From positions 124,001-188,000 of IMG/VR virus record IMGVR_UViG_3300031707_000001: a stretch of DNA of 64,000 bases; one strand, given 5' to 3'. The first letter of the stretch is position 1, and the number at the start of each line of letters is the position of its first letter. Made by a program: the position numbers and the translations under genes. Under the pieces are notes generated by a model. The model did no database searches. It had not been told where the DNA came from and worked only from the letters and a program-made list of their open reading frames with translations. Of the stretch, positions 13,718 through 52,273 are shown piece after piece.

Positions 13718-14353
13718 ATGAACGTTATCTATTCTATAAGTAATTGTGTTGATGGGCAGACCTATATAGGCCAGTCATGCATAGGTTACAAAGAGCGTTG
13801 GAAGCGTCACCGTTTGCTGTTGAATGCTAATGCACACTTTAATACGCATTTGCAACGTGCATGGAATAAGTATGGAGCAGACAACTTTGAATTTAAGGTG
13901 TTATCACAGAATATTCCTGAATCATGGTTAGATCTTTCAGAGAGAGGTTGGATATTATTTCATAGACATACTTCTGGATGTTATAACCTTACTTCTGGCG
14001 GTAATACCCGAAAGCATTTTGCAGAAGAAACCAAATACAAAATTAGTGTTGCTACGCAGGGTCGGATACCTTGGAATCAGGGTAAACATACGTGCACTGA
14101 AGCACAAAGACAGATGTTGCGAGAACAGATGCTTGGCAATACACATGCTTGTGGTACAATACATTCAGCAGAGTTTTGTCGTCAAGTTAGTTTGCGTAGT
14201 TTGGGTAACAAGTTCTGGGCAGAACGTATCGGATATATGCATTCACCAGCGACCAAACAAAAAATGCAGTTAGCACACATTGGTTGCTGTCATTCAGAAG
14301 AGACCAAACAAAAACTCCGGGACGCTGCAAAACGTCGCTGGGCGAAGGAGTAG
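13718..14353 (+). CDS. Free-standing GIY-YIG homing endonuclease with NUMOD3-like repeats
   Basis: VIYSI...TYIGQS...RWKRH...HFNTHLQRAWNKYG...YNL; C-terminal HSxETKxK repeats. Confidence 0.9.
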   Translation: MNVIYSISNCVDGQTYIGQSCIGYKERWKRHRLLLNANAHFNTHLQRAWNKYGADNFEFKVLSQNIPESWLDLSERGWILFHRHTSGCYNLTSGGNTRKHFAEETKYKISVATQGRIPWNQGKHTCTEAQRQMLREQMLGNTHACGTIHSAEFCRQVSLRSLGNKFWAERIGYMHSPATKQKMQLAHIGCCHSEETKQKLRDAAKRRWAKE

Positions 14354-14358
14354 ATAAA

Positions 14359-26831: not shown

Positions 26832-27132
26832 ACCTGTTATTCTTTCAGAAACGATGGTGCTGAAGGCATTGGCTGATCCAAAGTTTATAGCCCAAGCACC
26901 AGAATTTTCGGGTCTCCAGAGCAGGGCTAAAAGCCTGCCGCCCAAGCCATCAGGCTGTAGGCACTGTTACCAGGTTCGAGCTGTTACATCTTTACTGCGG
27001 GACTTCATCTATATGGCTATGGCGCTATCAGAGGAACCACGAGCACGAATGAAGAAGTACTTTGGGATCGAAGCCCTTATGTTAAATACGCACAATCCGA
27101 AAACCAATCAAGTCGAGGTAAAGATCATATGA
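26824..27132 (+). CDS. Hypothetical protein with CxxC
   Basis: Overlaps both neighbours; GCRHC. Confidence 0.6.
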   Translation: MTRPVILSETMVLKALADPKFIAQAPEFSGLQSRAKSLPPKPSGCRHCYQVRAVTSLLRDFIYMAMALSEEPRARMKKYFGIEALMLNTHNPKTNQVEVKII

Positions 27133-27764
27133 CACCCGAAATAAGTGCGAAGACTATAGTCGAAAATGCTGTGGCCGGCTGGCAACTTCCGTCAGGACTT
27201 ATATACGGAAGAGGTTTTGCAGATTGGAAGCCGGGCGCTTTACAACATAGCATTGAACTCATTTCTTTCGTGGAAGATCTTGTGGGTATGCAACAACATG
27301 GGATTGCATTGGAGATTGGCTTGGACAAAGGTGGTACTCACCTTGTGTGGAAACACCTCTATGCCAAAGTCATTTCCATAGACATCAATCTTAGCAATTC
27401 TGTAATGTTTGCATCGGGCCTTGTGCATAAACCTGAAGCAAGCAAGATCATTGTATCAAACTCACAACTTCCTTTGACGACTATACTTGTTGCTCAGGAG
27501 TTGAAAGGTGCGTTGGTGGATATGTTATTCATCGACGGGGACTACAACTACAATGCCGTTGAATCCGACTATCTCAACTACGAACCTTACGTGCGATCTG
27601 GAGGTATAGTTGCTTTCCACAATACAATTGGGCAGCAAGGTGTTAAGCAGTTTGTTCAAGAGTTGACGGCGGGCACGCATCCTGTAATCAAGCGTAAGTT
27701 TGCGTTTAAGGCATTTGTAGGCCCAGACAGACCACAAGGTATTGCCTATTATGTCAAGTCCTAG
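27129..27764 (+). CDS. Class I SAM-dependent methyltransferase (Methyltransf_24-like)
   Basis: LEIGLDKGGT; DMLFIDGD; GGIVAFHN. The usual DGDH and FHD motifs are altered. Confidence 0.85.
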   Translation: MTPEISAKTIVENAVAGWQLPSGLIYGRGFADWKPGALQHSIELISFVEDLVGMQQHGIALEIGLDKGGTHLVWKHLYAKVISIDINLSNSVMFASGLVHKPEASKIIVSNSQLPLTTILVAQELKGALVDMLFIDGDYNYNAVESDYLNYEPYVRSGGIVAFHNTIGQQGVKQFVQELTAGTHPVIKRKFAFKAFVGPDRPQGIAYYVKS

Positions 27765-30345: not shown

Positions 30346-31230
30346 ATGAGAACGATGGCCGCAGGTCCGTTCGTCGGTGAATTCGGCTACGAACTTTTCG
30401 ACTGGCAAGGTTATCTTCGTACACTTGCTTCAACATTTGATCGTGTAATCATATCCACTCGCCCTGGCCACGAAGCACTTTACACTGATTTCTGTCAGGA
30501 ATTTCGGCCTTACTTTTCGCCTACACCAGCTTGTGTAGGTCGAAAGAACTTCATAACATCTCTTCCTGAAATTGTGTCCAAAGATGTATTCGCTGACATG
30601 AAGGATCCTAGGATTATTAAACTTCCTGGTGGTCAGCAATTCAGAGACACAGCGCCCAAATACATCAGGTATGGTGTTGCTTCGCCAGAGCTGAAGTATG
30701 ACGTAGTGTTACATGCACGATCTCTTAAGATTGTACCCAAAACTAAACTGGGTCTTTCGGCTACCATGAGAGCGCTTAAGGAAGCTAGAAACTGGTTACC
30801 GGAATATTGGGTTGAGTTGGTTGGTTTGTTACCTGGATTTCGCATTTGTTCCATTGGTGCCATAGATGGTGCACTACATGTTCCCGGTACAGAAAATCTA
30901 TTGGGAAAGCCTTTACGTGAACTAGTAAACGTATTGGCGAGCAGTACGGTAACTGTAGGCCCGTCGAGCGGCGCCATGCATCTGGCAACGTTGTGTGGTT
31001 GTCCACAGGTAGTATGGTTTGACCAGGATGCAGCAGCAGGTCCTGCTAATCTAAACGCTCGGTACACCCACGATTGGAATCCTTTTGGGGCCTACGTAGA
31101 GCTTATTTCTGATTCCTGGAAACCTACACCGGTTCGTGTAGCAGATGCCATCAAACGTACTTTTGAACTTCTTTCCAAGTCTCCGGAACGTAGAGCTTCC
31201 ACACCCGTTCCCGTTGGTGTTCCCGCCTAA
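30346..31230 (+). CDS. Glycosyltransferase, GT-B/GT9 (heptosyltransferase-like)
   Basis: RNW..EYW.EL; VGPSSGAMHLATLCGCPQVVWF. Confidence 0.8.
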   Translation: MRTMAAGPFVGEFGYELFDWQGYLRTLASTFDRVIISTRPGHEALYTDFCQEFRPYFSPTPACVGRKNFITSLPEIVSKDVFADMKDPRIIKLPGGQQFRDTAPKYIRYGVASPELKYDVVLHARSLKIVPKTKLGLSATMRALKEARNWLPEYWVELVGLLPGFRICSIGAIDGALHVPGTENLLGKPLRELVNVLASSTVTVGPSSGAMHLATLCGCPQVVWFDQDAAAGPANLNARYTHDWNPFGAYVELISDSWKPTPVRVADAIKRTFELLSKSPERRASTPVPVGVPA

Positions 31231-31915
31231 AAGCTACAAGTTTTTCGTCTGCATTTCGTTTCAAGGCGCAGACGTCGTGTGTAGCTGGATTTTCTTCCAA
31301 CCAGCCTTTTTGATGTGCCAGTACAATTGCTGGAATCCTGCTTTGCTGCATGATCCAGCCTACTTGGTCATCAATCTTGCCTGGAAGAAGTTGATGCCAT
31401 TTGATTCGCAATAAGTCGGTGTGGTAACCCATTGTGCCCGTACCCAAATGATGCACGATAACATCTTTCGATACATCGCCTGCCATATGAACTAAGAGGT
31501 ACGTTGAGGGTTGCATGCCATCTTGGGGTTCAGCATAGAACAGGCCATGAAAAGCAACTACAGCCTGACGTTTGTACTTTTCGATTCCTTGGATCGTGGT
31601 CCAAACGTAATTTGGAGGATATACAATATCATCGTCAGCAGTAATGAAATATCCGCATGTTCGGGCGGCGTAGTAAAACTTTCCTCGTGGACCCGTTTCT
31701 CTTGGCTGTCGAATGACATTGACTTTTGGATCGTCGAAAATTTTATTGTAGTAGCCTATTGGATATCCGTTGAGGCAGACATCAAAGTGATCGCATTGTG
31801 GGAGCAATGCTTCTATGGTACATTCCATTCCAATCTCTCGTTCGGGAATGGTAGCCATGGATACGGTTATCTGTTCGTTGTCATTCAGCGGACTTACCGA
31901 CGGGAATTCGTTCAT
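31151..31915 (-). CDS. Glycosyltransferase, GT-A fold (GT2-like)
   Basis: VSMATIPER; ITADDDIVYP (DxD motif); GTG; DD. Confidence 0.8.
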   Translation of the reverse strand: MNEFPSVSPLNDNEQITVSMATIPEREIGMECTIEALLPQCDHFDVCLNGYPIGYYNKIFDDPKVNVIRQPRETGPRGKFYYAARTCGYFITADDDIVYPPNYVWTTIQGIEKYKRQAVVAFHGLFYAEPQDGMQPSTYLLVHMAGDVSKDVIVHHLGTGTMGYHTDLLRIKWHQLLPGKIDDQVGWIMQQSRIPAIVLAHQKGWLEENPATHDVCALKRNADEKLVAFRREHQRERVWKLYVPETWKEVQKYV

Positions 31916-39924: not shown

Positions 39925-40319
39925 TGGACGAAGTTACATTACATTTTGTGGATAAGGCGGGCAATGTCAAAGCCGAAGTAGCTGCCGAGATTGCAGAAAC
40001 ACCAGCCGATCGGCGTATGGGGCTTTCCAAGCGAGCATTTCTTCCATCCGGTAGAGGCATGTTTTTTGACAAGGCTGGAGCCTTTTGGATGAAGGATGTC
40101 AACTTTCCATTGGACATCGTTTTCTTGGATAAGCAGGGAACCGTACTTGAGAAACAGCATATGCCACAGGTCGAAGAGCCTACAGCATTGAAGCCACTTT
40201 ATGTGTCTTCGTCCAAGGAAGCTGCACATGCTTTGGAACTGCCGGCTGGCTGGTTTGATCGTCAAGGTTTGGCTGTAGGAATGAAACTTAGGCCAGTAGA
40301 GAGCAGACTGGACAGATGA
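39924..40319 (+). CDS. DUF192-family protein
   Basis: EIAETP..R..GL..R..L....GM.F....FWMKDV.FPLDIVFLD...ALELPAG. Confidence 0.9.
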   Translation: MDEVTLHFVDKAGNVKAEVAAEIAETPADRRMGLSKRAFLPSGRGMFFDKAGAFWMKDVNFPLDIVFLDKQGTVLEKQHMPQVEEPTALKPLYVSSSKEAAHALELPAGWFDRQGLAVGMKLRPVESRLDR

Positions 40320-40376: not shown

Positions 40377-40766
40377 ATGAATTGGAAGAATGGATTGACC
40401 TCGATAGTCGTTATGTTGGTGGCGTTTTCGATTACAGCATTTGCTCAAACTCCCAGCGGAAACCGGGTGAATAACAGCGAAACGATTTTGATGACCAACA
40501 ATACGGTGAGGATCACGTTGGCCCAGACAACACAACCGGTAAGTCCTGCCCAGGTTGAACTGACGTTCAAGGCTCCGGTAACTGCTACCTTCACCTTCAA
40601 CTATGAGCGTGGGGCTTACACCAATATGGTGATCAACAGGACCCTTACAAACCTGGTAACGTATATTTGGAACTGCCCTCGGGATTTGAAGCTGGTGGGA
40701 AACGATACACTGGTATTCACCAAGTCTGTCAGTGATCGGGCTCAGTTAACGATCAATTGGAAGTAA
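40377..40766 (+). CDS. Small exported beta-rich protein
   Basis: Signal peptide MNWKNGLTSIVVMLVAFSITAFA-Q; AAGGAG RBS. Confidence 0.75.
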   Translation: MNWKNGLTSIVVMLVAFSITAFAQTPSGNRVNNSETILMTNNTVRITLAQTTQPVSPAQVELTFKAPVTATFTFNYERGAYTNMVINRTLTNLVTYIWNCPRDLKLVGNDTLVFTKSVSDRAQLTINWK

Positions 40767-40779
40767 GGAGACAGTATTC

Positions 40780-43068
40780 ATGAAGAAACTGATTCATGTG
40801 TTTTTCGGTTTGTTGTTGGCGGTACTGCCTCTTGCAGCCCAAGAGATTGATAACGGAGCGCCGGTATACGTCGTTGAGATTATCAATGGCGTTCCGTATT
40901 TATCTGGCGCCGGCGGAGGTGGAGGCACCCCGGTCGATCTTACACCATATCTAAAGAAAGACGGTACAATCGCTTATACGGCCGATCAGAACGGCGGCGG
41001 ATTTGGAATTACCAATCTTGGGGCATTGATACCGTTTGGAAGCAATACTGTAAACTTGGGATCGCTGCTACATCCATGGGGAAGCATATATGCAAGCGGG
41101 CATACCATCTATTTGGACGGCATTCCAATGCTTTCGGTATCGAACAGTCAATTAGTTGTAGCATATCCAGTAGCCTCCAGCAATGGAACAACCTACACGA
41201 CAACAGTTGATCTTAGTGGTTTGTCCAATCAAGTTGCAGCCATAGAGGCTCGTACTAACGCCTGGAATACTGGATCCGCTGAAGGCAACTATGCTTCGAA
41301 CTGGATCGGTACGTATGGACCAGTTTTGGCCAGCACAAGTTATGTTGATAATGCTGTGTCCGGATATGCGCCCACCTCATCGATCAATGGAGTCTCTGGG
41401 CGTGTTTCTGCAATCGAAAGCAAAACCAATGACTGGAATACAGCTTATGGTTGGGGCAACCATGCTGTTGCAGGATACGCCGGTACAGGATCTGTGAACG
41501 CCGTTTCGGCGAGAGTTGGTACGATTGAAAGCAAAACCAATGACTGGAATGCTGTCTATTCCTGGATGCAGTCCAATTCTAATGGTTTGAGTTTTGTATT
41601 TTCTCAAACCAACTCGTGGACAGTAGGCGCCTCAGCGGGTAACTATGCATCCAATTGGATCGCAGTCTGGAGTCCAACTCTTGCCAGTACAAACTTTGTT
41701 ACTGATCTTTTGACTGGCTATGCTTCGACCTCAACGGTAAATGCGGTTTCTAGTAGGGTCGGAACCATCGAGGGACAAACTAACGCTTGGAATACAGCTA
41801 CAGCTTATGTAGCAGCAAAGTCGAATAACTGGGATACGGCGTATAACCATCTTTCAACCTTGTTTGCTGGATCGGGTACTACTGGCAATGTAACAAGTGC
41901 CACTGCCAATACCAACCAATACCTTCGTGGCGACGGTACCTGGCAGACTGTTGCAGCCTCAGGGGCTGGCGATGTTTTCAAGGGTAGTAACAATACCTAC
42001 TCTGCCGGAACAACTCAGTCCATGCCATATGCGATTATCAATAACGGATTGGAAGTGTATGGGAACACAATTCATACAAATTGTGGAGTTAGTTTGGGCT
42101 CTACAGATACAACCAAGGCCAAATTTTATGTCAATGGCGAGAGCGGAGCATATACAAACAAGCCTCTTGTCTGGTTCAATAGGAGTGCAGCGGCTACAGG
42201 CCCTATCTTGCAGTGGGGAACCAATGGTGTCCTTCTTGGGAGTATTGATGTGAATGGAAGCGTCTCTGTTCCATCAATAGGTATCTCAAACAATCTTACA
42301 CTCGGTGGGGTTACAGTGAGTTCCTTCTCGACGAACACTCCGATCTTTGCGGATGGCTCCCAGCCATTCAACGCCACTATGAATGCTGGAACTTTCGGAG
42401 TAACGAATCTTGGCACATTGCTTCCATTTGGCAGTAATACCTGTGATCTTGGAAGTGCCGCTCTTCCGTGGAGAAATGCGTATTACGTTTCGCATACGAT
42501 CTATATGGGCGGGTGGCCTATTTCTGTTGACGATGGCACCGGAAAACTCCTTGTACCGGGAGTTCAGTATTCTGCTCCACAATACACTATAAAGTCTGTG
42601 GCCGCTTCTGATATGATGCTTCGTGGTGCCGCTACTGATCCTGCATGGGATGGGCTCAAGGTTCGTATGACCTTCTCTGGGACGAATCTGAACGGGGTGA
42701 GTTTCATTTGCGATCTTCCGCAGTACAGTCCCGAAACCGATATAGTTCCGTTGATCTTGTGGGAAGGAAATGATGTGAATGTTTCCAATGTAATCTGGCA
42801 GATGGATTACATCTGGCGCAATATAGGTGATATTTCTACCTATGGAGATTGGACTACGCTTGCTGTGACTAATGTCAATCCTGCTTTGAAATGGCAATCT
42901 AAGGTATCCCGTTTTCCGACGGTTTCGGGAGCAGGGAAGAATAAGAATTCTGTCATTCAAATCAGACTGCAACGCCGTGGTGACTTGGACGATAACAACG
43001 ATACTGCGAGTCTTCTTTTCTTCGGGCTTAGGTATGCAATCCAAGCCACAGGTGAGGATGCACAATAA
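40780..43068 (+). CDS. Tail-fibre-like protein with a Sec signal peptide
   Basis: MKKLIHVFFGLLLAVLPLAA-Q; fibre motifs YLKKDG...ITNLG, P..SNT.DLGS...W (twice), TAYGWGNHA.AGY, YLRGDGTW. Confidence 0.75.
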   Translation: MKKLIHVFFGLLLAVLPLAAQEIDNGAPVYVVEIINGVPYLSGAGGGGGTPVDLTPYLKKDGTIAYTADQNGGGFGITNLGALIPFGSNTVNLGSLLHPWGSIYASGHTIYLDGIPMLSVSNSQLVVAYPVASSNGTTYTTTVDLSGLSNQVAAIEARTNAWNTGSAEGNYASNWIGTYGPVLASTSYVDNAVSGYAPTSSINGVSGRVSAIESKTNDWNTAYGWGNHAVAGYAGTGSVNAVSARVGTIESKTNDWNAVYSWMQSNSNGLSFVFSQTNSWTVGASAGNYASNWIAVWSPTLASTNFVTDLLTGYASTSTVNAVSSRVGTIEGQTNAWNTATAYVAAKSNNWDTAYNHLSTLFAGSGTTGNVTSATANTNQYLRGDGTWQTVAASGAGDVFKGSNNTYSAGTTQSMPYAIINNGLEVYGNTIHTNCGVSLGSTDTTKAKFYVNGESGAYTNKPLVWFNRSAAATGPILQWGTNGVLLGSIDVNGSVSVPSIGISNNLTLGGVTVSSFSTNTPIFADGSQPFNATMNAGTFGVTNLGTLLPFGSNTCDLGSAALPWRNAYYVSHTIYMGGWPISVDDGTGKLLVPGVQYSAPQYTIKSVAASDMMLRGAATDPAWDGLKVRMTFSGTNLNGVSFICDLPQYSPETDIVPLILWEGNDVNVSNVIWQMDYIWRNIGDISTYGDWTTLAVTNVNPALKWQSKVSRFPTVSGAGKNKNSVIQIRLQRRGDLDDNNDTASLLFFGLRYAIQATGEDAQ
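41416..41550 (+). repeat. 24-bp direct repeat within coding repeats
   Basis: GAAAGCAAAACCAATGACTGGAAT at 41416-41439 and 41527-41550. Confidence 0.85.
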
Positions 43069-46000
43069 TGAGATTTCTAACTTCTGTTGTGATGCTCCTT
43101 GGGCTATCCCTGTGTGCGTCAGCGGTTGATTACACATGGGACGGTGGCAATACTGCTGGTTATCAGTGGACCGCTCCTACCAACTGGAATCTGGACGCTG
43201 GTGCTCCCACTACTACGGCAGACAGGGCAATTTTTAACACTACAGGAACCACTAAGAATCCTACCGTTGATGTAAATATTGCTTTGGATGAATTTGTAGT
43301 TGGTGGAACTACGGGTTGGACGTGGTATCGGATAGGTGATATTACAAGTTTGGATATGCTTACCTACGGAAGCAGTGGAAGTTCCACAATGAATCCCGCT
43401 ATCACCGGGAAACGTCTTCTTGTAACTAACGGTATTCTCACTTTGAATGCTTCCAACAACTTTTCTGATACCGTTACGTTTCTGGCTGGTTCTGTTGTAT
43501 TAGGTACATCAGGTCAGATTGGAACAAATACTCCAATTCATATGGACGGATTTAGTGTATTGACGCTGAATTCTAGTAATAACTGGTATTCTTCTCAAAC
43601 TACTACAGTAGATTCTGTCATTGGCGGAACGGGCACGATAGAGTTGAAGTATAATGGAGCACCCATTCCTGTCTCAACAAATTCGTCTGGTGTTGTATCT
43701 GTTAATCAGGTCTCGTATAGCTATCCTCTTGATCTTGCATCAATTGGTATGATGTATCTCGGTTCCACAAATTTAGGAACCAATACTGCAACCAGTCTTG
43801 GAGTGGGTTCCGATGGAAACTATAGGATAGGCGCAGGTGGTGGAACAATAGCATTTGATTCTGCGGGTAGTGATCTAGGCGTGTTTACAGGAGCATGTAA
43901 TCTTGTTGTTGGAAGAAACGGTGGTGGAGTTAAGTATACAGGAACAGCCGTGCTGTCCGATTCCAATACCTTCTCTGGAACGATAATTGTCAATCGGGGA
44001 AGCACTCTAACAGGGTTGGCAATGACCAACAATAGTGGAGGTAGTCCCTTTGGAGCCACTAATGGAGTAGTCACGCTCAATTCGGGGGTTCTTAAATTGT
44101 CTCGTGGGTCGGCTACTACTATCAGACAACCTGTTGTTAAAGGAGCCATGAATCTTACTGGAGGTTCTACTGTTTATCTGGATGGAAATCATGCCACGGC
44201 AAATGTTCAGATCACTTTCGATTCAATTACGAAAGACCCCATATATGATTCTGCTCTGACAATTCAATATGTCAGTGCTCTTGGAACAAAGGAGAGATTT
44301 TTTGTCAATACTGGGGATTCGTATATCACAAACGATGCTCAGGGCATGATAAACGCTATGTATGTTGGGCTACAGGGAACTACCCTTTATTATCCTCTTA
44401 CCAGAAGTGGAGCATCTTCTCCTTACGAACTATTGACAACAAACTATACTTATACGACAGGGGCCGCTAGTCCATTCTCTAATTCTATACCTACAAGTAT
44501 TGTTTTGGTGTCTAATGCTGGAGGTTATAGTCCAGAACTTATTTACGGCCAAACGATCACGAATTGGGCAACAGCTTTTGCTTGGAATGGTCATTGGAAC
44601 TCGTCTGCTGGTTCAACTATAGTAATTCAAAGTGGTTTATTGATATACGAATATTCAGGTGGTCCTAGCTTCCGGTCCAACTTGGATTTTTCACTTGCAT
44701 CTCAGGGTAGAATAGTTACGATGTCTGGTGGAACCCTTAATGCACTTGGGAATATTACTTCTCCATATCTTGTAAAATCAGGACCGGGAGGACTTAGTCT
44801 GGGTTCGGCAGCTCCGGGACATACGGGGATCAATGGAAAGCTATTAGTTTCTGAAGGTCTTGTGGAATTTGATCAGATTGGAGGAGCCGATTTCTTTTCA
44901 AACATACCTAATGCAACCAATCTAATTTTAACCGGCGGAAGTATAGCTTGTACTGCGGGAAGATGTAGTTTCCAAACAAACATTACTGTCATAATAGGTC
45001 CAACCGGAGGAACTATCACATCTGGTGACTATATGTCATTTTATGGAAAGGTTACTGGTCCCGGTTTGATGTGTTGGAATGGACTTGCCGGTAAAGAGTT
45101 AAGATTTAGGGGTGTGGGTAACGATTGGTCTGGTGGTTTGTATGCTAGTTTAGGGATTGTCACTGTTTATGATGGAAGTAGTTTAGGAAGTGGTCCTATA
45201 AGAATGGCTGCTGGAACTACACTTAATGTCAGAACCAATCTGGATATTTCTTCTCTTCGAGGCAGGGGTGCTGTAGTGATTGGAAATGATGTGGCTACTG
45301 GAACTAAATATCTGACCGTCGGAAGCGGAAACACGGACGATAACTTTCCGGGTGTCATAAGCGATCAAGCATCTACTAGAAATGGATCGTTGATTAAAAC
45401 GGGAACAGGGACTATGACATTATGGGGACCGAATACCTTTACTGGCGGAACAACAATCAATGGGGGAATTCTGGCTGTTACAGGATTCTCCTTGCATGAT
45501 ACGGGTACGGTAACTGTTGCTGGTGGAACTTTGAGTATGATTGATAGTGAGACTGTTGGGAATGTAACTTTGAATTCTGGTTCAATTACTGGAAATAGTA
45601 CATTAACTACTGGAAATTTATATCTCAATCAAGGGACAGTAGATTCTATTCTCTCTACCGCATCTAACTTCGTGAAGAACACTTCGGGAACTGTTACGCT
45701 GAACAAAGCGAATACATTTTCCGGGTCGGCAATCATCACAAACGGATTGTTGCTCGTCCAAGGAAGCATTGGTGCAGGCACAACACTTACAAACTATATG
45801 GGCACACTTGGCGGGACTGGGACTGTGTATCGTCATGTTGAAATGATGCCGGGAAGCTATCTTACACCCGGAGCTTCGATTGGAACGATTACTGTTAGCA
45901 ATTTGAACTTTGAAGTGGGCAGCACTGTGGACTTTGAATTGGCGACAACGAATGCAAGTGACTTTGTTCAAGTCAATGGATTGCTGGGGTTGGGTGGCAA

Positions 46001-46238
46001 TATTCGAGTTGTGCCGTCAACGGGATTCGGATATGGAGTATATCCGCTCTTTGGATATACAACGATCACAACGAATCAAGCACCGAGGATTATCACGCCT
46101 GCCGGGTATGCAGGAACTTTGAGCACTGACGATTCCGCCAAGAAGGTATATTTGACAATAGGTTCTGACGCTCTTCGACCTGTCAAGTCGGGAACGTCTT
46201 TACTTTTGAAATCGGGTAAGATATTGTTGAGTAAGTAG
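43068..46238 (+). CDS. Exported beta-helical adhesin with autotransporter-associated beta-strand repeats, no translocator barrel
   Basis: Signal peptide; TWDGG....W....NW start; LIKTGTGTMTLWGPNTFTGGTTINGG and FVKNTSGTVTLNKANTFSG repeats; GTLGGTG...LTPGASIGT. Confidence 0.85.
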   Translation: MRFLTSVVMLLGLSLCASAVDYTWDGGNTAGYQWTAPTNWNLDAGAPTTTADRAIFNTTGTTKNPTVDVNIALDEFVVGGTTGWTWYRIGDITSLDMLTYGSSGSSTMNPAITGKRLLVTNGILTLNASNNFSDTVTFLAGSVVLGTSGQIGTNTPIHMDGFSVLTLNSSNNWYSSQTTTVDSVIGGTGTIELKYNGAPIPVSTNSSGVVSVNQVSYSYPLDLASIGMMYLGSTNLGTNTATSLGVGSDGNYRIGAGGGTIAFDSAGSDLGVFTGACNLVVGRNGGGVKYTGTAVLSDSNTFSGTIIVNRGSTLTGLAMTNNSGGSPFGATNGVVTLNSGVLKLSRGSATTIRQPVVKGAMNLTGGSTVYLDGNHATANVQITFDSITKDPIYDSALTIQYVSALGTKERFFVNTGDSYITNDAQGMINAMYVGLQGTTLYYPLTRSGASSPYELLTTNYTYTTGAASPFSNSIPTSIVLVSNAGGYSPELIYGQTITNWATAFAWNGHWNSSAGSTIVIQSGLLIYEYSGGPSFRSNLDFSLASQGRIVTMSGGTLNALGNITSPYLVKSGPGGLSLGSAAPGHTGINGKLLVSEGLVEFDQIGGADFFSNIPNATNLILTGGSIACTAGRCSFQTNITVIIGPTGGTITSGDYMSFYGKVTGPGLMCWNGLAGKELRFRGVGNDWSGGLYASLGIVTVYDGSSLGSGPIRMAAGTTLNVRTNLDISSLRGRGAVVIGNDVATGTKYLTVGSGNTDDNFPGVISDQASTRNGSLIKTGTGTMTLWGPNTFTGGTTINGGILAVTGFSLHDTGTVTVAGGTLSMIDSETVGNVTLNSGSITGNSTLTTGNLYLNQGTVDSILSTASNFVKNTSGTVTLNKANTFSGSAIITNGLLLVQGSIGAGTTLTNYMGTLGGTGTVYRHVEMMPGSYLTPGASIGTITVSNLNFEVGSTVDFELATTNASDFVQVNGLLGLGGNIRVVPSTGFGYGVYPLFGYTTITTNQAPRIITPAGYAGTLSTDDSAKKVYLTIGSDALRPVKSGTSLLLKSGKILLSK

Positions 46239-46253
46239 TGAAAGGATAAAGCA

Positions 46254-46412
46254 ATGAGAATTCTGTCTGTTCTGCTCGTAATTGTAATGGGTGCCTTTCT
46301 GATGGGTTGTGCTGGAACTAAATCGGCCGATAGTAAAGCGGGCCCGAAGAGTCCGGCAAAGATGATGGTAAAAGATACACGTCCTCGTCCGCTTCCGGCC
46401 GGCATAAAGTAA
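46254..46412 (+). CDS. 52-aa lipoprotein
   Basis: MRILSVLLVIVMGAFLMG-CAGTK... has a lipobox; AAGGA RBS; not in the ORF track. Confidence 0.75.
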   Translation: MRILSVLLVIVMGAFLMGCAGTKSADSKAGPKSPAKMMVKDTRPRPLPAGIK

Positions 46413-46430
46413 CATCGAATGGGGGTTCTT

Positions 46431-47726
46431 ATGTGGAAATGGTTGCAGAATCTTATTGATCAGATTTCCAAATGGATCAAGCCGAAGCCCACACCAACAC
46501 CTCCGGCGCCAGACAACCCTTCGCAACTCAGAGGTTACGGTATGGTTTGTCATTGGATGACGCTACCTGATTTTATAGCCTTCGCAAAGGCCATAAAGGA
46601 TAGTGGTTGCAACTGTACCTCCATAGAACTGTTCGGCAGGGAAGAGGATAGTTGGATCAACCGCCAGGACTTCTTGAAACAGCAACTGTCTAATCTCCTT
46701 ACTGCGTGTCGAGCCAACGGCATAACGCTATTCGTCAATATGGTAAACTGGGGTAGTGGTAGTTTGACAAGCCAACCTGATACGTGGTTTCAAGGATGGT
46801 TGGATTTCATCAAGCAATTGGGGCCCGACAAATTGATTGTCCAGGCTGCCGCAGAGTGGCATGATGGCAAGGCTGCTGCGTGGTGTCAAATGGCTGAGTC
46901 GACCTTGTCCGGCTTTAAGCTGTCCTGGAATCAAGGATCCAGGCCTTCTACAGCTTCTGCCAAGTACGCTTACATCGACTATCATTCAGCTTCCATAGGT
47001 GATTACGGAGTGTCGAATAAACGCATAATCTGCAACACCGATAGTGGAATACTTACCGAGATGGAGAATGGTGGCATAATGGGGCAGACGTTTATACCTG
47101 AGAAAGTCACACAATTTGCGACTGGCGCTCTGGCCCAGGGCAAGTCTGTCAACTTGTACGGGTACAATCATAAGAGCCTTGATGTCGAAGCAGTAAAGAC
47201 TTTGGGAAAAGTTGGAAATCCTAATCCAACGCCAACTCCGACCCCGAGTCCGGACGGATTTGTCTTTGGACAGAATTGCATTTGGCTGGGAGACATACCT
47301 TGCTCTAAAGACGCACAAGTAGCGCCCAATGCGAAGATACTAACTGCAAATGCTTCAAATACGAGCTATGTCAATCTTACATACGCTTCCGAGGCTAGTC
47401 AGCAGTGGTGGAAGCCTTACGACCAGTTTTGCTACGGACCACACGGGGCTCAATACAAAGCAGCCGACGGTAATTGGTACGCCGGTCGTGCTGATTGGTT
47501 TCCTATACAGTTGAGAAACAAGATTGAGATAGGGAACTATTGGAAGAGTGATACGCCATTTAAGGATCATCCCCCTGTAGTCGGCAATCCTTTCTACTTC
47601 TTTGTGTATTCGTCCGACGGGAAAAATCGATCTACAGCCATACAAGTTGTATGGAAACTGGGATTCTTCCGCTCCATATGGCGGAGATTGAAGACAACGA
47701 ATAAGAAGATGCGAGGTATTAAATGA
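46431..47726 (+). CDS. Putative glycoside-hydrolase-like protein with Pro/Thr linkers
   Basis: TIM-barrel-like alternating pattern (ACRANGITLFVNM...AAEW...YIDYH...NTD), two PT linkers, amphipathic termini. Confidence 0.45.
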   Translation: MWKWLQNLIDQISKWIKPKPTPTPPAPDNPSQLRGYGMVCHWMTLPDFIAFAKAIKDSGCNCTSIELFGREEDSWINRQDFLKQQLSNLLTACRANGITLFVNMVNWGSGSLTSQPDTWFQGWLDFIKQLGPDKLIVQAAAEWHDGKAAAWCQMAESTLSGFKLSWNQGSRPSTASAKYAYIDYHSASIGDYGVSNKRIICNTDSGILTEMENGGIMGQTFIPEKVTQFATGALAQGKSVNLYGYNHKSLDVEAVKTLGKVGNPNPTPTPTPSPDGFVFGQNCIWLGDIPCSKDAQVAPNAKILTANASNTSYVNLTYASEASQQWWKPYDQFCYGPHGAQYKAADGNWYAGRADWFPIQLRNKIEIGNYWKSDTPFKDHPPVVGNPFYFFVYSSDGKNRSTAIQVVWKLGFFRSIWRRLKTTNKKMRGIK

Positions 47727-50700
47727 CTTGGAAAAGGCTTATCGGATTTTTGGCAGGTGTAGCGGTTGCTTCTGTGGCTTTTGCCCAGAGTCAAAATAAC
47801 GTGTTGTCACAACTGGGCGTAAAAGGCGTTACCGATCAGATCTATGGTACGAATCCAGCGCTCTATGCCGGCTATTTGGTTAAGACTGGAACGAACGGGC
47901 TATTCAGTACATCGATGATGTCTACGGATATTGTGCCACGGCGTTGGTTTGAGACAGTTTTTCTGGATAGCGTAAATGGGTTGAATGCAACCAATTCCGG
48001 AACTGCGACCTGTCCGTACAAGACCTTCGCCTACGCCGCTGCTCGAACGACAAACGATACCGCTTTCGTATTCGCTCCCGGGACTTATGCGGGGGATACG
48101 ATTACGAACTCGCATGTACACCACGTAGCGTTGATCGGCTTGGATCCTACCAATACAACCATGACTGGTATATTGAACTTCAACGCCAATCTTATGGCCG
48201 GTACCCAGGACATTTCGGTGGATCTGTATGGTATCAACGTTGATACTGTGCGTCAGTATCAATATGGGTTGTTCAATGTTGGTCTCTACAATAGAGCAAA
48301 GGTAACAAGTCAGATTACAAGACTTTCTACCAATCTCAATAGCTCGTTGACACTTTTCATGGATCCTTCAACTTATTTGGCATCACCGATCACTACGAGC
48401 AACGCAACGATAGTTATCAAGGCTTATGTGCCACAAGGAACAGCCGCAGGACAATTGACGTGTTGGGACGGCGCTAATTGGGCAATCGTAGCTGCTGGCA
48501 CAACGAATCAAGTCCTCTATGGGGGTACTGTTCCGTTTTGGGGAAGTGCGTCGATCGTATACACGAATACAGCTATACCTGGAGACTTTACGCCTGCTAT
48601 CAGCAATAGATATAGCATAGGTTCTCAAACTATGCCCTGGAGCAACGGTTGGTTTGCTACAGGTTTGTATGTGGGCGGGTCGAACGTGTTGAACAGCATT
48701 TACGTGGGTAATTACGCATCCAACTGGATTTCGGTATATGGGTCTGCTCTTGCTTCTACGAATTATGTGAATGCGAGTATCTCCAACATAACGCTTGCTA
48801 CAGTTGTGGCCAACGGAAGCAATGCTTTTTCTTCCGTGGTGGTAGATGGAATACGAACTCCAGATGATGCGCCATATGTAGCTCTTGCTGTAGGCGTTAC
48901 CAATCGAACGCTTAATTATCAAGGAACAGAAGTTGTTAACTGGAGTTTAGGCGGCGTTAATAACGGTTGGCTAATGAAACGTCCTCTTCGTAGTGATTCC
49001 GACGGCGCCCCGAGTTTCGATCCAAACGAACGGGCTTTGATGGGGGCCTGGATCGCAAGTAACAATTTAACCGTGTGTGATTCACTATTTGTCAGCAACA
49101 ACATATCTGAGGCAGGCACTAACCTGGTATTGAAATATGCGTCTGTTCTTGAACCATTAGCCGTTGCAGCCAGTAACCACGCCTTTTATGCTTCTGAAGC
49201 CGGGCATTCCACAAATGCGGACAACGCAATGCAACTCAATTCTATCGGTGCGTCGGCATTTGCTCGGAGAGATACTACCAATACTTTCACTCAGCCACAG
49301 ACTATCAGCATTAATAGCGCTGCAACTATAGTATCAGACGCAACTAACTCCAACTCCAGCGGAGGAGCTTTATACCACATTGCCGGGGATACTGGAGAAT
49401 ATCTGCAACTCGGTGTATTTGGTTCGGCGTTTGCACTTCCAGGTGTTCGCCAACAGGGCTTTATCGGCTGTTCCACAAACATAATCATCGGGCTGGATAT
49501 GGATGTAGCATCTGGTGGAACGAGCGTATTTGATGTCTATACGGGAGGCTATCTTGCGGTTACTCCAACGCTTCGTGTTTCCGGAACCAACATCATGGAA
49601 AACGGGGTAGCATTGGGCAACAAATATGCGCCTAAAAATATAGAAACGTTGCAAACTGTGACAACGAGAGGGAACACTTCCGATCAGGATTTGGCTCTGA
49701 GTGGATCCAAAATTATCGTGGGTGGGTTGATAGGAGGTCCGGGAGGACAAACAACTTGGGGATTAGGTGCGTGGGGTGCAGATTTTGGAGTTCTAAATCC
49801 TTACGGAATTCAAAATCTTGATGCCAAAGCAACGTGGAATTTTGGATATTGCAACGGCTTTCCACCTAACATCTACGCCGCTCAAACTAACCAAGGTTAC
49901 GGATCGCTAAATCTAGGCTATATCAATTGTGCTGTATCTTCGGCTGCTCAGCTAATGACTGGTCGTGGTTCCTTGAACGTAGGTAACCTGGCCAACGGTG
50001 AATATCAAAATACAAGCGGCAACGGAGCGTTAAACGTCGGCGCCAACAACACGTTGACACACGACTATTCTGCTGTCTTCGGCAATGGCCAAGTCTCGTA
50101 TGAGACCAATTCAGTATCTGCTCGCAAGTATTACGAAGCTGGAGCCGCCCTGTCCAACAGGTATGCTGGAATTGCTATTGAAGGATGGACCAACAATTGG
50201 AATATAGGAGCAGCAGAAGGCAACTATGCTTCTAATTGGGTCTATACTTGGGGCCCTGCTTTGGCCACTACGAATTATGTGAATGCTAGTATCTCCAACG
50301 TGACTCTTGCTACAGTTGTGGCAGCGGGAAGTAATGCTTCTGCAGTAATCACCGCATATGGCGTGCGAAATGAAAATGAATCTCCTATGCTGGTCCCATC
50401 AGTTTGCGTAAGTAATCGGACGTTAAACGTTGGCGGTGTTCCATATCTAAAATGGGACAGTAGTTGGTTATACTTTCTCCAGCCCATACGAAGCAACGCA
50501 GATGGCGGAGAGAGCATGGAAGCTAACGATCGTGTCTTGTGGGGCAACTGGGTTGCAACAAACGATTTCGCAGTAGCCGGCACGATTACCGAGGGATCAC
50601 AAACACTGAGTCAGAAGTATGACTCCAAAATACGCCCAGTGGAAGTAAAGACTGACAACTACAACGTGCTTACGAATGATGTCGCAAAAACGTTTGTAAT

Positions 50701-50959
50701 GAATACGGCTTCAAAGACCAATTTCCTGCCATCAGTAGATGCTTCTAATGTGGGTATTTGGTATACCTTCGTGAAGCATAATACCGGCACGTTGACGATA
50801 AAGGCGGCAGGTATCACTCAGATAGCCGACAGCGGACAGGGTGATACGATTTATGATTCTCAGGCTGCCGAAGTCTATGCCACAGTAACGCTCCAACTTG
50901 TCACCAGCACGAACTGGGTAATAACAGGTGCCCACGGAACTTGGACAACCACGGACTAA
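47723..50959 (+). CDS. Tail-fibre-like protein with a Sec signal peptide
   Basis: MTWKRLIGFLAGVAVASVAFA-Q; G....PYKT..YA and PGTY motifs; ETLQTVTTRGN; GNYASNW repeats shared with 40780; C-terminal KTDNY.V...D...LP......G..Y domain. Confidence 0.75.
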   Translation: MTWKRLIGFLAGVAVASVAFAQSQNNVLSQLGVKGVTDQIYGTNPALYAGYLVKTGTNGLFSTSMMSTDIVPRRWFETVFLDSVNGLNATNSGTATCPYKTFAYAAARTTNDTAFVFAPGTYAGDTITNSHVHHVALIGLDPTNTTMTGILNFNANLMAGTQDISVDLYGINVDTVRQYQYGLFNVGLYNRAKVTSQITRLSTNLNSSLTLFMDPSTYLASPITTSNATIVIKAYVPQGTAAGQLTCWDGANWAIVAAGTTNQVLYGGTVPFWGSASIVYTNTAIPGDFTPAISNRYSIGSQTMPWSNGWFATGLYVGGSNVLNSIYVGNYASNWISVYGSALASTNYVNASISNITLATVVANGSNAFSSVVVDGIRTPDDAPYVALAVGVTNRTLNYQGTEVVNWSLGGVNNGWLMKRPLRSDSDGAPSFDPNERALMGAWIASNNLTVCDSLFVSNNISEAGTNLVLKYASVLEPLAVAASNHAFYASEAGHSTNADNAMQLNSIGASAFARRDTTNTFTQPQTISINSAATIVSDATNSNSSGGALYHIAGDTGEYLQLGVFGSAFALPGVRQQGFIGCSTNIIIGLDMDVASGGTSVFDVYTGGYLAVTPTLRVSGTNIMENGVALGNKYAPKNIETLQTVTTRGNTSDQDLALSGSKIIVGGLIGGPGGQTTWGLGAWGADFGVLNPYGIQNLDAKATWNFGYCNGFPPNIYAAQTNQGYGSLNLGYINCAVSSAAQLMTGRGSLNVGNLANGEYQNTSGNGALNVGANNTLTHDYSAVFGNGQVSYETNSVSARKYYEAGAALSNRYAGIAIEGWTNNWNIGAAEGNYASNWVYTWGPALATTNYVNASISNVTLATVVAAGSNASAVITAYGVRNENESPMLVPSVCVSNRTLNVGGVPYLKWDSSWLYFLQPIRSNADGGESMEANDRVLWGNWVATNDFAVAGTITEGSQTLSQKYDSKIRPVEVKTDNYNVLTNDVAKTFVMNTASKTNFLPSVDASNVGIWYTFVKHNTGTLTIKAAGITQIADSGQGDTIYDSQAAEVYATVTLQLVTSTNWVITGAHGTWTTTD

Positions 50960-50969
50960 GGAGACTACG

Positions 50970-51860
50970 ATGCCAGACGTATCAGTAAACAGATTTGGAG
51001 CGGCAAAGGGACTCATAATGTCGGACGTTACACAGACCAATGTTAACTTGAGTTCTTTGTTAAGCTGGATTTCTCAGAACAATAATATAGACCTAAGAGA
51101 TTTCAAAGCAGCTACTAATGTAGTTTTAGGGACTTTGCCAAATAAAATACGTGGTATAGATATAAGTGGTCTACCTTCTTTGACTAGCTTATCTATAACT
51201 TCTTCGGATTCTAATTCCCGACCTTACCTTCGGATAAGAGATTGCATTTCGTTATCTTCTTTTGGTAGTGGTAGTGCAGGATATTTTCGTAGCGTGGATG
51301 CTAGTGGTTGTACATCACTTACCACTCTAACGGCAGTTATTAAATGGCAGGCGGGCGATCCTTATCCTATAGCATTTGCTGGATGTAATGCTCTTACTAA
51401 TTTGGACTTTTATGGTGGAGTAGGGGCTTCTGATTTTGGAGCAATTACTATGGACTTCAGTGCTCTTCCTGCTTTGAGATATATTAACTCAAGAACTGCT
51501 ACTGGCCTTGTGGGGTTTATTGCGCCACCTTGTTCTTCCAATGCGTACTTCAGTTTTTACAACTGCACAAGTTTACTTACTGCTGATCTTTCTTTGGCTA
51601 CAGATTTGACCAATGTAAGTTTTCAACAGTGTTCTGCGTTGACTACTATAACAATTTCTCCGAGCATTACAGCAATTACTTTGGATGCTGCGTTGTGTTA
51701 TCTTTCTGAAGCCTGTGTGAATGACCTTGTAGCCAAGGGTGTAGCCTCTGGATTGAGTAGTCAAACTTTGCATATAGGGGGAGGAAATAACCACGCACTA
51801 ACTGGTCAGGGTATTACGGATAAGGCTACTTTGCAGGGAAGAGGTTGGACAGTTAATTGA
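50970..51860 (+). CDS. Leucine-rich-repeat-like protein
   Basis: Repeats ISGLPSLTSL, ASGCTSLTTL, FAGCNALTNL, FYNCTSLLTA, FQQCSALTTI; AAGGAG RBS. Confidence 0.75.
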   Translation: MPDVSVNRFGAAKGLIMSDVTQTNVNLSSLLSWISQNNNIDLRDFKAATNVVLGTLPNKIRGIDISGLPSLTSLSITSSDSNSRPYLRIRDCISLSSFGSGSAGYFRSVDASGCTSLTTLTAVIKWQAGDPYPIAFAGCNALTNLDFYGGVGASDFGAITMDFSALPALRYINSRTATGLVGFIAPPCSSNAYFSFYNCTSLLTADLSLATDLTNVSFQQCSALTTITISPSITAITLDAALCYLSEACVNDLVAKGVASGLSSQTLHIGGGNNHALTGQGITDKATLQGRGWTVN

Positions 51861-51878: not shown

Positions 51879-52265
51879 ATGAAAACAAAAATTCTAGTGT
51901 GGGCGTTAATGGCGTGTTTGGCTACTCCGGCAATTGCGTATGATTGGTTGACAACTATGCAGGCACCGGTGGAGAATCGGCTTCTATCTATTGGTATATG
52001 CTCGTACAGCGAAAGTGCGCATCCTTTAGCTGCAGCCGCTTATTTCAACTTTTGTCCTCTTACTTTCTTCGATGATCATCTTCGTATTGGTGTTGGTATG
52101 CTTGGTGGCTACGATGATGGGGACGTGCTGTTCAAACTTCATACTTCCGTGAGTACTAGGATCTTTGATTCATTGGAGGTCGGTGTGTGGTATGCACCGT
52201 TTTGGGGCTTGTCCCGGTATGAAGATCCATACGGCGTAATGGTTGGATACGTATTCAAACTCTAG
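51879..52265 (+). CDS. Small exported protein, possible outer-membrane beta-barrel (subunit)
   Basis: Signal peptide; alternating amphipathic strands; ends in YGVMVGYVFKL, similar to a beta-signal. Confidence 0.6.
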   Translation: MKTKILVWALMACLATPAIAYDWLTTMQAPVENRLLSIGICSYSESAHPLAAAAYFNFCPLTFFDDHLRIGVGMLGGYDDGDVLFKLHTSVSTRIFDSLEVGVWYAPFWGLSRYEDPYGVMVGYVFKL

Positions 52266-52273
52266 GAGACGCT

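What the first reader, a model, noticed from the sequence alone, without database searches (positions are those of the whole stretch)
40377..50959. S/T-N dipeptide enrichment concentrated in the exported proteins
Seen (hand count, approximate): about 28 TN/SN in the 762-aa protein, roughly 40% of its Asn, and more than 40 in the 1078-aa protein. The similarly sized structural protein at 14359, which has no signal peptide, has only a few. Inference: a sequon for periplasmic glycosylation by the host (reverse order to N-x-S/T). That would explain why fibres are exported, namely to acquire host glycans.
Basis: partly seen in the sequence, partly recalled or inferred. Interest (0 to 1): 0.7.

Follow-up and report, generated by a model that had tools for sequence, protein, structure and literature searches.

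The report
Thr-Asn signature of exported phage proteins
The phage's signal-peptide proteins really do carry far too many Thr-Asn (and some Ser-Asn) pairs, and the same oddity marks exported proteins of several other phages and of some Verrucomicrobiota/Lentisphaerota bacteria, so it looks like a host-linked mark of the cell envelope, possibly a new modification site, whose chemistry is still untested.

Summary
The counts are right. [ST]N occurs 28, 27 and 43 times in the 762-, 1056- and 1078-aa signal-peptide proteins (expected 13.5, 18.3, 19.4), and about 42% of Asn in the first and third follow Ser/Thr. The excess survives composition shuffles and repeat collapse. It is directional (N[ST], [ST]xN and NxS/T are about 1) and in-frame only, so it acts at the amino-acid level.

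The core signal is Thr-Asn. Signal-peptide proteins on eight other phage/prophage contigs show it (TN 257 vs 98 expected). Some of these have no BLAST similarity to the fibres or to each other. Proteins without a signal peptide do not show it, including most SP-less homologues and T4 fibres.

A Limisphaerales genome, one of the bacterial genomes that hold relatives of the PATR protein, has TN as the top dipeptide of its exported proteins (551 vs 257, z 18). Most other sampled Verrucomicrobiota do not.

The link to export and to the host is therefore supported. A PglB-type N-glycosylation reading is not: canonical sequons are not enriched overall and STT3 is absent from the TN-positive genomes. 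My preferred reading, unproven, is an envelope-side modification motif, probably on Thr. The main rival is a lineage-specific structural preference.

The parts
40780..43068 (+). 762-aa fibre-like protein with a Sec-type signal peptide (ends LAA|QE); internal repeats; C-terminal beta-sandwich domain resembling carbohydrate-binding modules; TN 15 vs 6.7 expected, SN 13 vs 6.8
43068..46238 (+). 1056-aa signal-peptide protein with a PATR repeat (autotransporter-passenger-like beta-helix); no beta-barrel domain hit; TN 18 vs 10.3 expected, SN not enriched
47723..50959 (+). 1078-aa fibre/tailspike-like protein with a signal peptide (AFA|QS); TN 25 vs 10.6 expected, SN 18 vs 8.9; residues about 306-455 and 822-955 are duplicated
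40377..40766 (+). 129-aa signal-peptide protein inside the reported span; no enrichment (3 vs 2.9)
46419..47726 (+). 435-aa protein without a signal peptide, lying between the exported genes; no enrichment (4 vs 3.6)
50928..51860 (+). 310-aa protein with weak BspA-type leucine-rich repeat hits; no signal peptide seen
51879..52265 (+). 128-aa signal-peptide protein with only 2 Asn and no enrichment; a homologue holds the same position in L006
52274..53092 (+). Papain-family (C1) peptidase without a signal peptide; a C1 peptidase follows the exported-protein genes in L004 and L006 too, and in the window and L006 a minus-strand terminase comes next
30346..31230 (+). 294-aa GT9-like (heptosyltransferase-like) putative glycosyltransferase; a lead only
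31151..31915 (-). ORF with a weak GT2 match, below the family cut-off
27129..27764 (+). Methyltransf_24-family methyltransferase near the putative glycosyltransferases
14284..17352 (+).

Best explanation
Shown. The window belongs to a 210.7-kb phage with direct terminal repeats, found in sediment metagenomes. It encodes a cluster of Sec-signal-peptide proteins: two fibre-like proteins and one PATR beta-helix protein. In these, Asn is preceded by Thr (and, inside fibre repeats, Ser) two to four times more often than composition predicts. The bias acts at the amino-acid level and is directional. It is specific for Thr (not Val or Ile, and not Ser outside the fibres) and for Asn (not Asp or Gln). 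It is restricted to signal-peptide proteins. It recurs in signal-peptide proteins of eight other phage or prophage contigs, some with no BLAST similarity to the fibres or to each other. It also recurs in the exported proteins of some PVC-group bacteria (a Limisphaerales MAG, a Lentisphaeraceae MAG and one further Verrucomicrobiota genome) but not of most others sampled. TN positions turn over between orthologues while their density is kept.

Inferred. The phage's host belongs to such a lineage, and Thr-Asn is a short motif selected in proteins that leave the cytoplasm there. The most likely meaning is an acceptor site for a covalent modification made on the periplasmic or outer face of the envelope. 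I favour O-glycosylation of the Thr by a host polyprenol-dependent GT-C enzyme. This would resemble the lineage-specific general O-glycosylation of Bacteroidota, with a different sequon. Phage proteins that work in or pass through that envelope carry the same motif. No modification has been observed.
For: Statistics within the phage. In-frame only.

Thr and Asn specificity, gap and direction controls: (proteins without BLAST similarity to the fibres or each other: TN 79 vs 20, SN 1.15, NT 1.15, T.N 0.75), (VN 0.77, IN 0.61, TD 0.81, TQ 0.84).

Link to export. Own genome, SP-like ORFs 71 vs 34.4, the rest 124 vs 133.7. Homologues, 17/54 vs 1/80. Eight other phage contigs, SP class 257 vs 98.2, 13/25 individually significant against 1/78, Fisher p 6e-9.

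Not a fold effect. The enriched proteins share no BLAST similarity. TN-rich Limisphaerales proteins carry Ig, LamG, PKD, Big_7, PATR and InlB-B domains. T4 gp34-37 show 34 vs 37.

Host-lineage trait. Bacterial relatives of the PATR protein lie in Limisphaerales, Kiritimatiellia, Verrucomicrobiae and Lentisphaeraceae. G001 SP class 551 vs 257, z 18. G004 1.57; G002 and G003 none. Only 1 of 10 further Verrucomicrobiota genomes is positive.

Sequon-like turnover: 37% of TN kept between orthologues and 25 gains.

Local context: flanks are depleted of charged residues, with Gly at -2 relative to Asn (just before the Thr) and Thr at +2.

GT-C capacity: 11 PMT_2-type genes in G001. TMEM260-like genes occur in all three TN-positive genomes and in none of seven genomes lacking the trait.
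Against: No chemical evidence of any modification. No known transferase reads Thr-Asn (literature search). The TMEM260-like correlation is weak: four genomes that are negative or ambiguous for the trait also carry the family.

Signal peptides were called with a crude home-made rule, and the bacterial genomes were sampled at only 60-600 kb each. The small exported proteins of the phage lack the bias. In L004 the excess is mostly Ser-Asn rather than Thr-Asn. In the one confident structural region (the C-terminal domain of the 762-aa protein) the three [ST]N sit at strand/loop borders, which also fits a purely structural role. The host is inferred, not shown.
Confidence: 0.4

Rival explanations
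1. Structural preference without modification. In the beta-rich extracytoplasmic proteins of these lineages, a Thr ends a strand and an Asn starts the turn (or the pair caps or stacks in solenoids and fibres). The bias would then reflect how these proteins fold outside the cytoplasm. The phage proteins share it because they were acquired from, or co-evolved with, host surface proteins.
For: Part of the fibre signal sits in recurring structural repeats such as the TN-x-W-N-x-A-Y and YASNW motifs, and SP-less tail fibres also carry [ST]NW before the WxxAYGWG motif. Flanks of TN sites are hydrophobic or uncharged, as for strands. In the confident C-terminal domain the [ST]N lie at strand ends. 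The PATR protein is a beta-helix type.
Against: Val-Asn, Ile-Asn and (outside the fibres) Ser-Asn are not enriched, nor are Thr-Asp or Thr-Gln, which a generic strand-end/turn rule would predict. Homologues without signal peptides but sharing domains mostly lack the bias. T4 fibres lack it. Most Verrucomicrobiota with similar domain families lack it. Sites turn over between orthologues.
Confidence: 0.3
2. One reading: [ST]-N is a reversed N-glycosylation sequon, and the Asn is glycosylated in the periplasm by a host oligosaccharyltransferase.
For: The bias is export-specific and host-lineage-specific. At Limisphaerales TN sites Thr is 1.8-fold enriched two residues after the Asn, so a minority of sites also form N-x-T.
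Against: No STT3/PglB match in the TN-positive genomes G001 and G004 and no multi-spanning enzyme in the phage. N-x-S/T has O/E 0.69-1.13, and D/E-x-N-x-S/T occurs 0-3 times per protein (the 3 sites in the 762-aa protein are nominally above its 0.7 expected, z +2.7, but none occur in the other three proteins). No enzyme known to read a residue at -1 turned up in the literature search.
Confidence: 0.1
3. Cytoplasmic O-glycosylation before export by phage-encoded glycosyltransferases, in the manner of the TibC/AAH heptosyltransferases that modify Ser/Thr in strand-loop-strand motifs of autotransporter passengers. The GT9-like ORF at 30346-31230 would be the enzyme.
For: The phage has two weak GT9-like ORFs, a GT1-family enzyme and a weak GT2 hit. 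By language-model features the 30346 ORF sits in a viral GT9-like cluster, and structural neighbours of that cluster's model include a largely viral cluster named as autotransporter strand-loop-strand O-heptosyltransferase. L004 has two GT1-family genes and a methyltransferase right after its exported-protein cluster.
Against: The GT9 matches are below the cut-off and there is no TibC N-terminal domain. The PATR (passenger-like) protein is the least enriched of the three. The retrieved parts of L005, L006 and L008-L012 show no glycosyltransferase. The bacterial proteome-wide trait points to a host function.
Confidence: 0.1
4. Artefact of composition, low-complexity stretches, repeats or gene calling.
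For: Repeats do contribute. About a third to a half of the [ST]N in the two fibres lie in repeated modules, and one homologue (P0008) is explained entirely by a 72-aa tandem repeat.
Against: Shuffles, repeat masking, gap and direction controls, frame specificity and non-repetitive proteins with no BLAST similarity to each other all keep the signal. The same pipeline gives about 1 or less in 10 of 14 bacterial genomes sampled.
Confidence: 0.03

Closest known systems
General O-glycosylation of Bacteroidota (motif D-S/T-A/I/L/V/M/T; own knowledge)
   Same: A short, lineage-specific motif on many unrelated Sec-exported proteins, read on the periplasmic side. This is the model that the Thr-Asn pattern most resembles.
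   Different: The motif differs: D-[ST]-[AILVMT] is not significantly enriched here. The lineage also differs (PVC group). No modification or enzyme is known for Thr-Asn.
PglB/STT3 N-glycosylation (D/E-x-N-x-S/T) and cytoplasmic NGT (N-x-S/T)
   Same: Asn-centred short sequons on exported proteins.
   Different: Those sequons are not enriched overall. STT3 was not found in the TN-positive genomes. Here the informative neighbour is at -1 and must be Thr.
TibC/AAH autotransporter heptosyltransferases (GT9-like)
   Same: They hyper-glycosylate Ser/Thr of exported beta-helix adhesins. The phage has GT9-like ORFs and a PATR beta-helix protein.
   Different: Those enzymes act in the cytoplasm on a structural motif, not a dipeptide. 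The phage ORFs match only weakly and lack the TibC N-terminal domain.
Eukaryotic TMEM260/TMTC/PMT-type GT-C O-mannosyltransferases and their bacterial homologues (own knowledge)
   Same: Lumenal or periplasmic O-mannosylation of Thr/Ser on strands of Ig-like and cadherin-like domains. TMEM260-like genes are present in all three TN-positive genomes.
   Different: No dipeptide sequon is known for them. The family also occurs in genomes without the trait. Bacterial members are uncharacterised.
PEP-CTERM protein composition (Haft et al. 2006, PMC1569441)
   Same: Exported proteins of environmental bacteria that are rich in Thr, Ser and Asn and poor in basic residues. The authors read this as a hint of glycosylation.
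   Different: That was single-residue composition. The present signal is an ordered dipeptide after correcting for composition, and the phage proteins have no PEP-CTERM tail by eye.
Phage tail fibres and Bdellovibrio fibre adhesins
   Same: The 762- and 1078-aa proteins have tail-fibre-type repeats. The 762-aa protein has a beta-sandwich tip that matches phage baseplate and fibre proteins, carbohydrate-binding modules and Bdellovibrio Bd1399.
   Different: They carry cleavable-looking signal peptides, unlike fibres assembled in the cytoplasm. They lie away from the baseplate module, between DNA-metabolism genes and the terminase.

Membership tests
PglB-type N-glycosylation substrates | Acceptor sequon D/E-x-N-x-S/T (or N-x-S/T) enriched or present at the Asn in question | tested here: not met
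   N-x-S/T O/E 0.69, 0.96, 1.13 and 0.74. D/E-x-N-x-S/T occurs 3, 0, 0 and 0 times.
PglB-type N-glycosylation substrates | An STT3/PglB oligosaccharyltransferase in the host or phage | tested here: not met
   No PF02516 match in the TN-positive genomes G001 and G004; a match only in the TN-negative G002. The phage has no protein with more than four hydrophobic spans. The true host is unknown.
Bacteroidota-type general O-glycosylation | Motif D-[ST]-[AILVMT] on exported proteins | tested here: inconclusive
   O/E 1.08, 1.64, 1.97 and 1.90, all z below 2. It does not explain the TN signal.
TibC/AAH (BAHT) glycosylation system | GT9-fold heptosyltransferase with a TibC-type N-terminal domain | tested here: not met
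   PF01075 matches with E 0.007 and 4e-4, below the cut-off. No TibC_1st hit. No PDB sequence match. Only resemblance by features in the Atlas.
TibC/AAH (BAHT) glycosylation system | Autotransporter passenger substrate | tested here: inconclusive
   A PATR repeat is present in the 1056-aa protein above the cut-off, but there is no beta-barrel domain hit and it shows the weakest TN excess.
GT-C (TMEM260/PMT-like) protein O-mannosylation | Presence of the transferase in genomes that show the trait and absence elsewhere | tested here: inconclusive
   PF11028 is present in 3 of 3 TN-positive genomes, absent from 7 TN-negative genomes and present in 4 negative or ambiguous genomes. PMT_2 is present in all four genomes tested.
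GT-C (TMEM260/PMT-like) protein O-mannosylation | Sugar attached to Thr of the motif | not testable with these tools
   Needs mass spectrometry.
Phage tail-fibre proteins | Fibre repeats and a distal binding domain, with homologues in phage structural modules | tested here: met
   Repeats. The C-terminal beta-sandwich matches carbohydrate-binding modules and phage fibre proteins. Homologues lie in the structural regions of L008 and L010.
Phage tail-fibre proteins | Assembly in the cytoplasm (no export signal) and presence in the virion | tested here: not met
   N-termini look like Sec signal peptides and are conserved as such in homologues. Presence in the virion is not testable here.
Classical autotransporter (type Va) | C-terminal beta-barrel translocator domain | tested here: not met
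   The only Pfam hit in the 1056-aa protein is PATR.

The most novel reading that the evidence does not exclude
Thr-Asn is the acceptor motif of an undescribed general protein-modification system of the cell envelope in some PVC-group bacteria (Limisphaerales, some Lentisphaerota). Their phages, across very different genome types, export fibre-like and other proteins that carry the same motif. The dipeptide signature would then both reveal a new sequon and serve as a host-prediction mark for uncultured phages.
Probability: 0.35. Interest if true: 0.9.

Novelty: new variant of a known kind. Interest (0 to 1): 0.78.

Why it matters
If Thr-Asn marks a modification site, this would be a new lineage-wide protein-modification code in poorly studied Verrucomicrobiota and Lentisphaerota, found from sequence alone. 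It would give a concrete target for glycoproteomics and for finding the enzyme by phylogenetic profiling.

Whatever the chemistry, the signature links uncultured phages to a host lineage through the make-up of their exported proteins. It also draws attention to a recurrent, unexplained class of phage fibre-like proteins that carry signal peptides.

Tried and rejected
- Megablast of the region against cultured phages found nothing. The terminase is only 29% identical to cultured phages.
- AlphaFold of the 226-aa protein failed (pLDDT 33). AlphaFold of the 762-aa protein was confident only for the signal-peptide helix and residues about 620-758, so TN sites could not be placed on a structure.
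- A DNA-level motif was rejected. Composition and repeats were rejected as the full cause.
- A generic tail-fibre property was rejected using T4 gp34-37.
- A Bacteroidota host, suggested by Gln after the signal-peptide cleavage sites, was not pursued. Homologues with the Bacteroidota-style AQ..FKYQ start lack the bias, and by eye Limisphaerales signal peptides also end in AQ.
- A PDB sequence search with the GT9-like ORF gave nothing. The two GT9-like ORFs are not detectably similar to each other.
- Literature searches found no Thr-Asn sequon and nothing useful on tail fibres with signal peptides.
Full report
**What the window is.** The window is bases 124001-188000 of a 210,732-bp virus record with direct terminal repeats. 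It recurs in sediment metagenomes. Its terminase is only about 29% identical to those of cultured phages. A baseplate module lies at about 1-26 kb of the window (gp6-like wedge at 9813).

The reported span (40377-50959) lies elsewhere, between DNA-metabolism genes and a minus-strand terminase (53394-55169). The DNA-metabolism genes are endonuclease VII, a LigD-like ligase and a DUF192 protein.

The span holds, in order:
- a 129-aa signal-peptide protein;
- a 762-aa fibre-like protein with a signal peptide;
- a 1056-aa signal-peptide protein with a PATR repeat;
- a 435-aa protein without a signal peptide;
- a 1078-aa fibre/tailspike-like protein with a signal peptide.

These are followed by a BspA-type LRR protein, a 128-aa signal-peptide protein and a papain-family peptidase.

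**The observation.** The hand counts are correct:

| Protein | [ST]N observed | Expected | z |
|---|---|---|---|
| 762 aa | 28 | 13.5 | 4.6-4.8 |
| 1056 aa (PATR) | 27 | 18.3 | 2.5 |
| 1078 aa | 43 | 19.4 | 6.1 |

In the 762- and 1078-aa proteins 42% of Asn follow Ser/Thr. The control protein at 14284-17352 has 6 against 7.2 expected. TN and SN are the top dipeptides of the two fibres.

Internal and shared repeats exist and contribute. Masking the later copies still leaves O/E 2.2, 1.43 and 1.81. Removing every repeated stretch leaves 1.66, 1.55 and 1.78.

The reverse order and other spacings are not enriched. Codon pairs are diverse. ACNAAY is found 187 times in frame against 9-10 in the other frames.

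**Sharpening the signal.** A fourth protein outside the window (genome 207686-208366) also carries a signal peptide. It has 12 [ST]N against 2.9 expected, so 12 of its 17 Asn follow Ser/Thr.

I then looked at relatives of the window proteins, found by protein search, and at their contigs. On eight other phage or prophage contigs, with G+C from 32% to 59%, the signal-peptide proteins carry the bias and their neighbours do not:
- TN 257 vs 98.2 expected in 25 signal-peptide proteins, 13 of them individually significant;
- 1 of 78 other proteins significant (Fisher p 6e-9).

Several enriched proteins have no BLAST similarity to the fibres or to one another and are not repetitive. In that subset TN is 79 vs 20 (O/E 3.95, z 13), while SN is 1.15, NT 1.15 and T-x-N 0.75.

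Val-Asn, Ile-Asn, Thr-Asp and Thr-Gln are not enriched. The core signal is therefore Thr-Asn. Ser-Asn is added mainly inside fibre repeats, and it dominates in the low-G+C contig L004.

Among full-length homologues of the 762-aa protein, 17 of 54 with a signal peptide are TN-enriched at p<0.01, against 1 of 80 without. T4 long-tail-fibre proteins, which are equally rich in Asn, Ser and Thr, show 34 vs 37.

Within this phage, signal-peptide-like ORFs have TN 71 vs 34.4 and all other ORFs have 124 vs 133.7.

Between orthologue pairs only 37% of TN sites are kept, and 25 new ones appear elsewhere. Thr and Asn in TN are only slightly better conserved than other Thr and Asn. Density is maintained while positions drift.

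**Link to a host lineage.**
- By features, the PATR protein resembles PATR proteins of Verrucomicrobiota and Kiritimatiellota.
- A scan of species genomes found relatives in Limisphaerales, Kiritimatiellia, Verrucomicrobiae and Lentisphaeraceae MAGs, plus one Anaerolineales MAG.
- In a 598-kb sample of the Limisphaerales genome (G001), proteins with signal-peptide-like starts have TN 551 vs 257 (O/E 2.14, z 18). This is by far the top dipeptide; SN is 0.84, NT 0.85 and T-x-N 0.88.
- The remaining G001 proteins give 1.45. This class contains some missed exported proteins, because the longest-ORF starts overshoot the true starts.
- The TN-rich proteins there carry many different extracellular domains: Ig_3, I-set, LamG_3, Big_7, PKD, InlB-B and PATR.
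- The Lentisphaeraceae genome shows 1.57 against 0.88.
- The Kiritimatiellia and Verrucomicrobiae genomes show no excess.
- Of ten further Verrucomicrobiota genomes drawn evenly from the phylum, only one is positive (24 vs 9.4).

The same pipeline thus gives about 1 or less in most genomes. The bias is a lineage-restricted property of exported proteins, and the phage shares it. This makes a Limisphaerales-like host plausible but does not prove it.

**What it most likely means.** Four features point to molecular recognition outside the cytoplasm rather than to a general folding propensity:
- strict Thr and Asn specificity;
- restriction to exported proteins;
- independence from fold;
- positional turnover with maintained density, in a restricted set of lineages.

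At Limisphaerales TN sites charged residues are depleted from -4 to +5. Gly is favoured at -2 relative to Asn (just before the Thr), and Thr is favoured two residues after the Asn.

A PglB-type reading is unlikely. Canonical sequons are not enriched overall. STT3 is absent from the TN-positive genomes. The phage has no multi-spanning enzyme.

Polyprenol-dependent GT-C genes are plentiful (11 PMT_2-type in G001). TMEM260-like genes are present in all three TN-positive genomes and absent from seven genomes without the trait, but they also occur in four genomes that are negative or ambiguous. This is a lead, not evidence.

The phage itself encodes a GT1-family enzyme, two weak GT9-like ORFs, a weak GT2 hit and a methyltransferase. 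L004 has two GT1-family genes right after its exported cluster. Other contigs show none in the parts retrieved. A cytoplasmic phage-encoded glycosylation therefore stays a minor rival.

The structural rival (Thr ending a strand, Asn opening a turn) fits the hydrophobic, uncharged flanks. It also fits the three sites that could be placed in the confident C-terminal beta-sandwich. It does not explain the exclusion of Ser, Val, Ile, Asp and Gln, or the absence of the bias from homologues without signal peptides.

**What is known.** I found no description of a Thr-Asn motif. The nearest published ideas are:
- a proposed G-T/S-x O-glycosylation motif in a planctomycete S-layer protein (PMC5088730).

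The closest working analogy is the general O-glycosylation of Bacteroidota with its own three-residue motif (own knowledge).

**Limits.**
- Signal peptides were called with a simple hydrophobicity and -3/-1 rule, not with SignalP.
- Gene calls are longest ORFs.
- Bacterial genomes were sampled, not surveyed.
- Genome handles are anonymous, so the taxonomy of the second positive Verrucomicrobiota genome is unknown.
- No structure of the TN-rich regions was obtained.
- Nothing here shows a modification.
- Why fibre-like proteins carry signal peptides remains unexplained, as does whether they are virion parts.

Noticed in passing
window 17940-26417: Five or six consecutive genes start with a shared N-terminal motif (N-x-N/S-x-x-R/A-x-Y-P-F/L-R-E/D). 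They look like a paralogous set of baseplate or fibre proteins with a common attachment domain. None has a signal peptide or the TN bias.
   Followed up: no
window 40780-53092 and 53394-55169; L004:10001-15020; L006:378-6653: Conserved gene order across phages of 32%, 47% and 56% G+C. In all three, signal-peptide fibre genes are followed by a C1 (papain-type) peptidase without a signal peptide. A PATR beta-helix protein sits between them in the window and L004. A minus-strand terminase follows the peptidase in the window and L006. The role of the peptidase is unknown.
   Followed up: partly
window 40780, 47723, 40377, 27974 (N-termini); L006, L008; G001 loci: Predicted signal-peptide cleavage sites are often followed by Gln (AFA|Q, LAA|Q, VFA|Q). 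The same is seen by eye in Limisphaerales proteins, recalling the pyroglutamate 'Q-rule' described for Bacteroidota.
   Followed up: no
genome 207686-208366 (L003:7686-8366), outside the window: A 217-226-aa signal-peptide protein in which 12 of 17 Asn follow Ser/Thr. It has one 45-47%-identical homologue (P0161), also TN-rich, and no family assignment.
   Followed up: partly
L008:1330-14559; L010:8076-11384; L009:10001-18656: Signal-peptide, TN-rich proteins sit inside the structural modules of quite different phages (a Mu-like phage, and one encoding ERF and YqaJ). Exported fibre-like proteins are therefore a recurrent and unexplained phage feature.
   Followed up: partly
L011 (JGI contig of 447,162 bp, range 122591-144636): A Mu-like prophage region (Mu portal, Gam, AAA_22 transposition protein) carries the TN-rich signal-peptide protein P0157. 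This contig could name a host directly, but it is not held in the searchable genomes.
   Followed up: partly
window 38170-39924 and 39924-40319: A LigD-like enzyme that fuses a 3'-phosphoesterase domain to an ATP-dependent ligase, followed by a DUF192 protein that lacks the signal peptide which, from my own knowledge, is usual for that family.
   Followed up: no
window 40780-43068, residues about 620-758: The confidently modelled C-terminal beta-sandwich resembles carbohydrate-binding modules (CBM6/16/61), phage baseplate and fibre proteins and Bdellovibrio Bd1399. More than 100 metagenomic proteins share this domain as their C-terminus.
   Followed up: partly
P0008 (homologue, 931 aa): Nine tandem 72-aa repeats each contain G/A-A-S-N-x-Y-Y and W-E-T-A-Y-G-W-G-D-H. 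Its whole [ST]N excess comes from these repeats, a reminder that single proteins can mislead.
   Followed up: yes
L004:10001-11707 (P0005): In the 32% G+C T4-like contig the exported fibre is enriched in Ser-Asn rather than Thr-Asn (TN O/E 1.16 for its signal-peptide class). The Ser/Thr balance may differ between host lineages.
   Followed up: no
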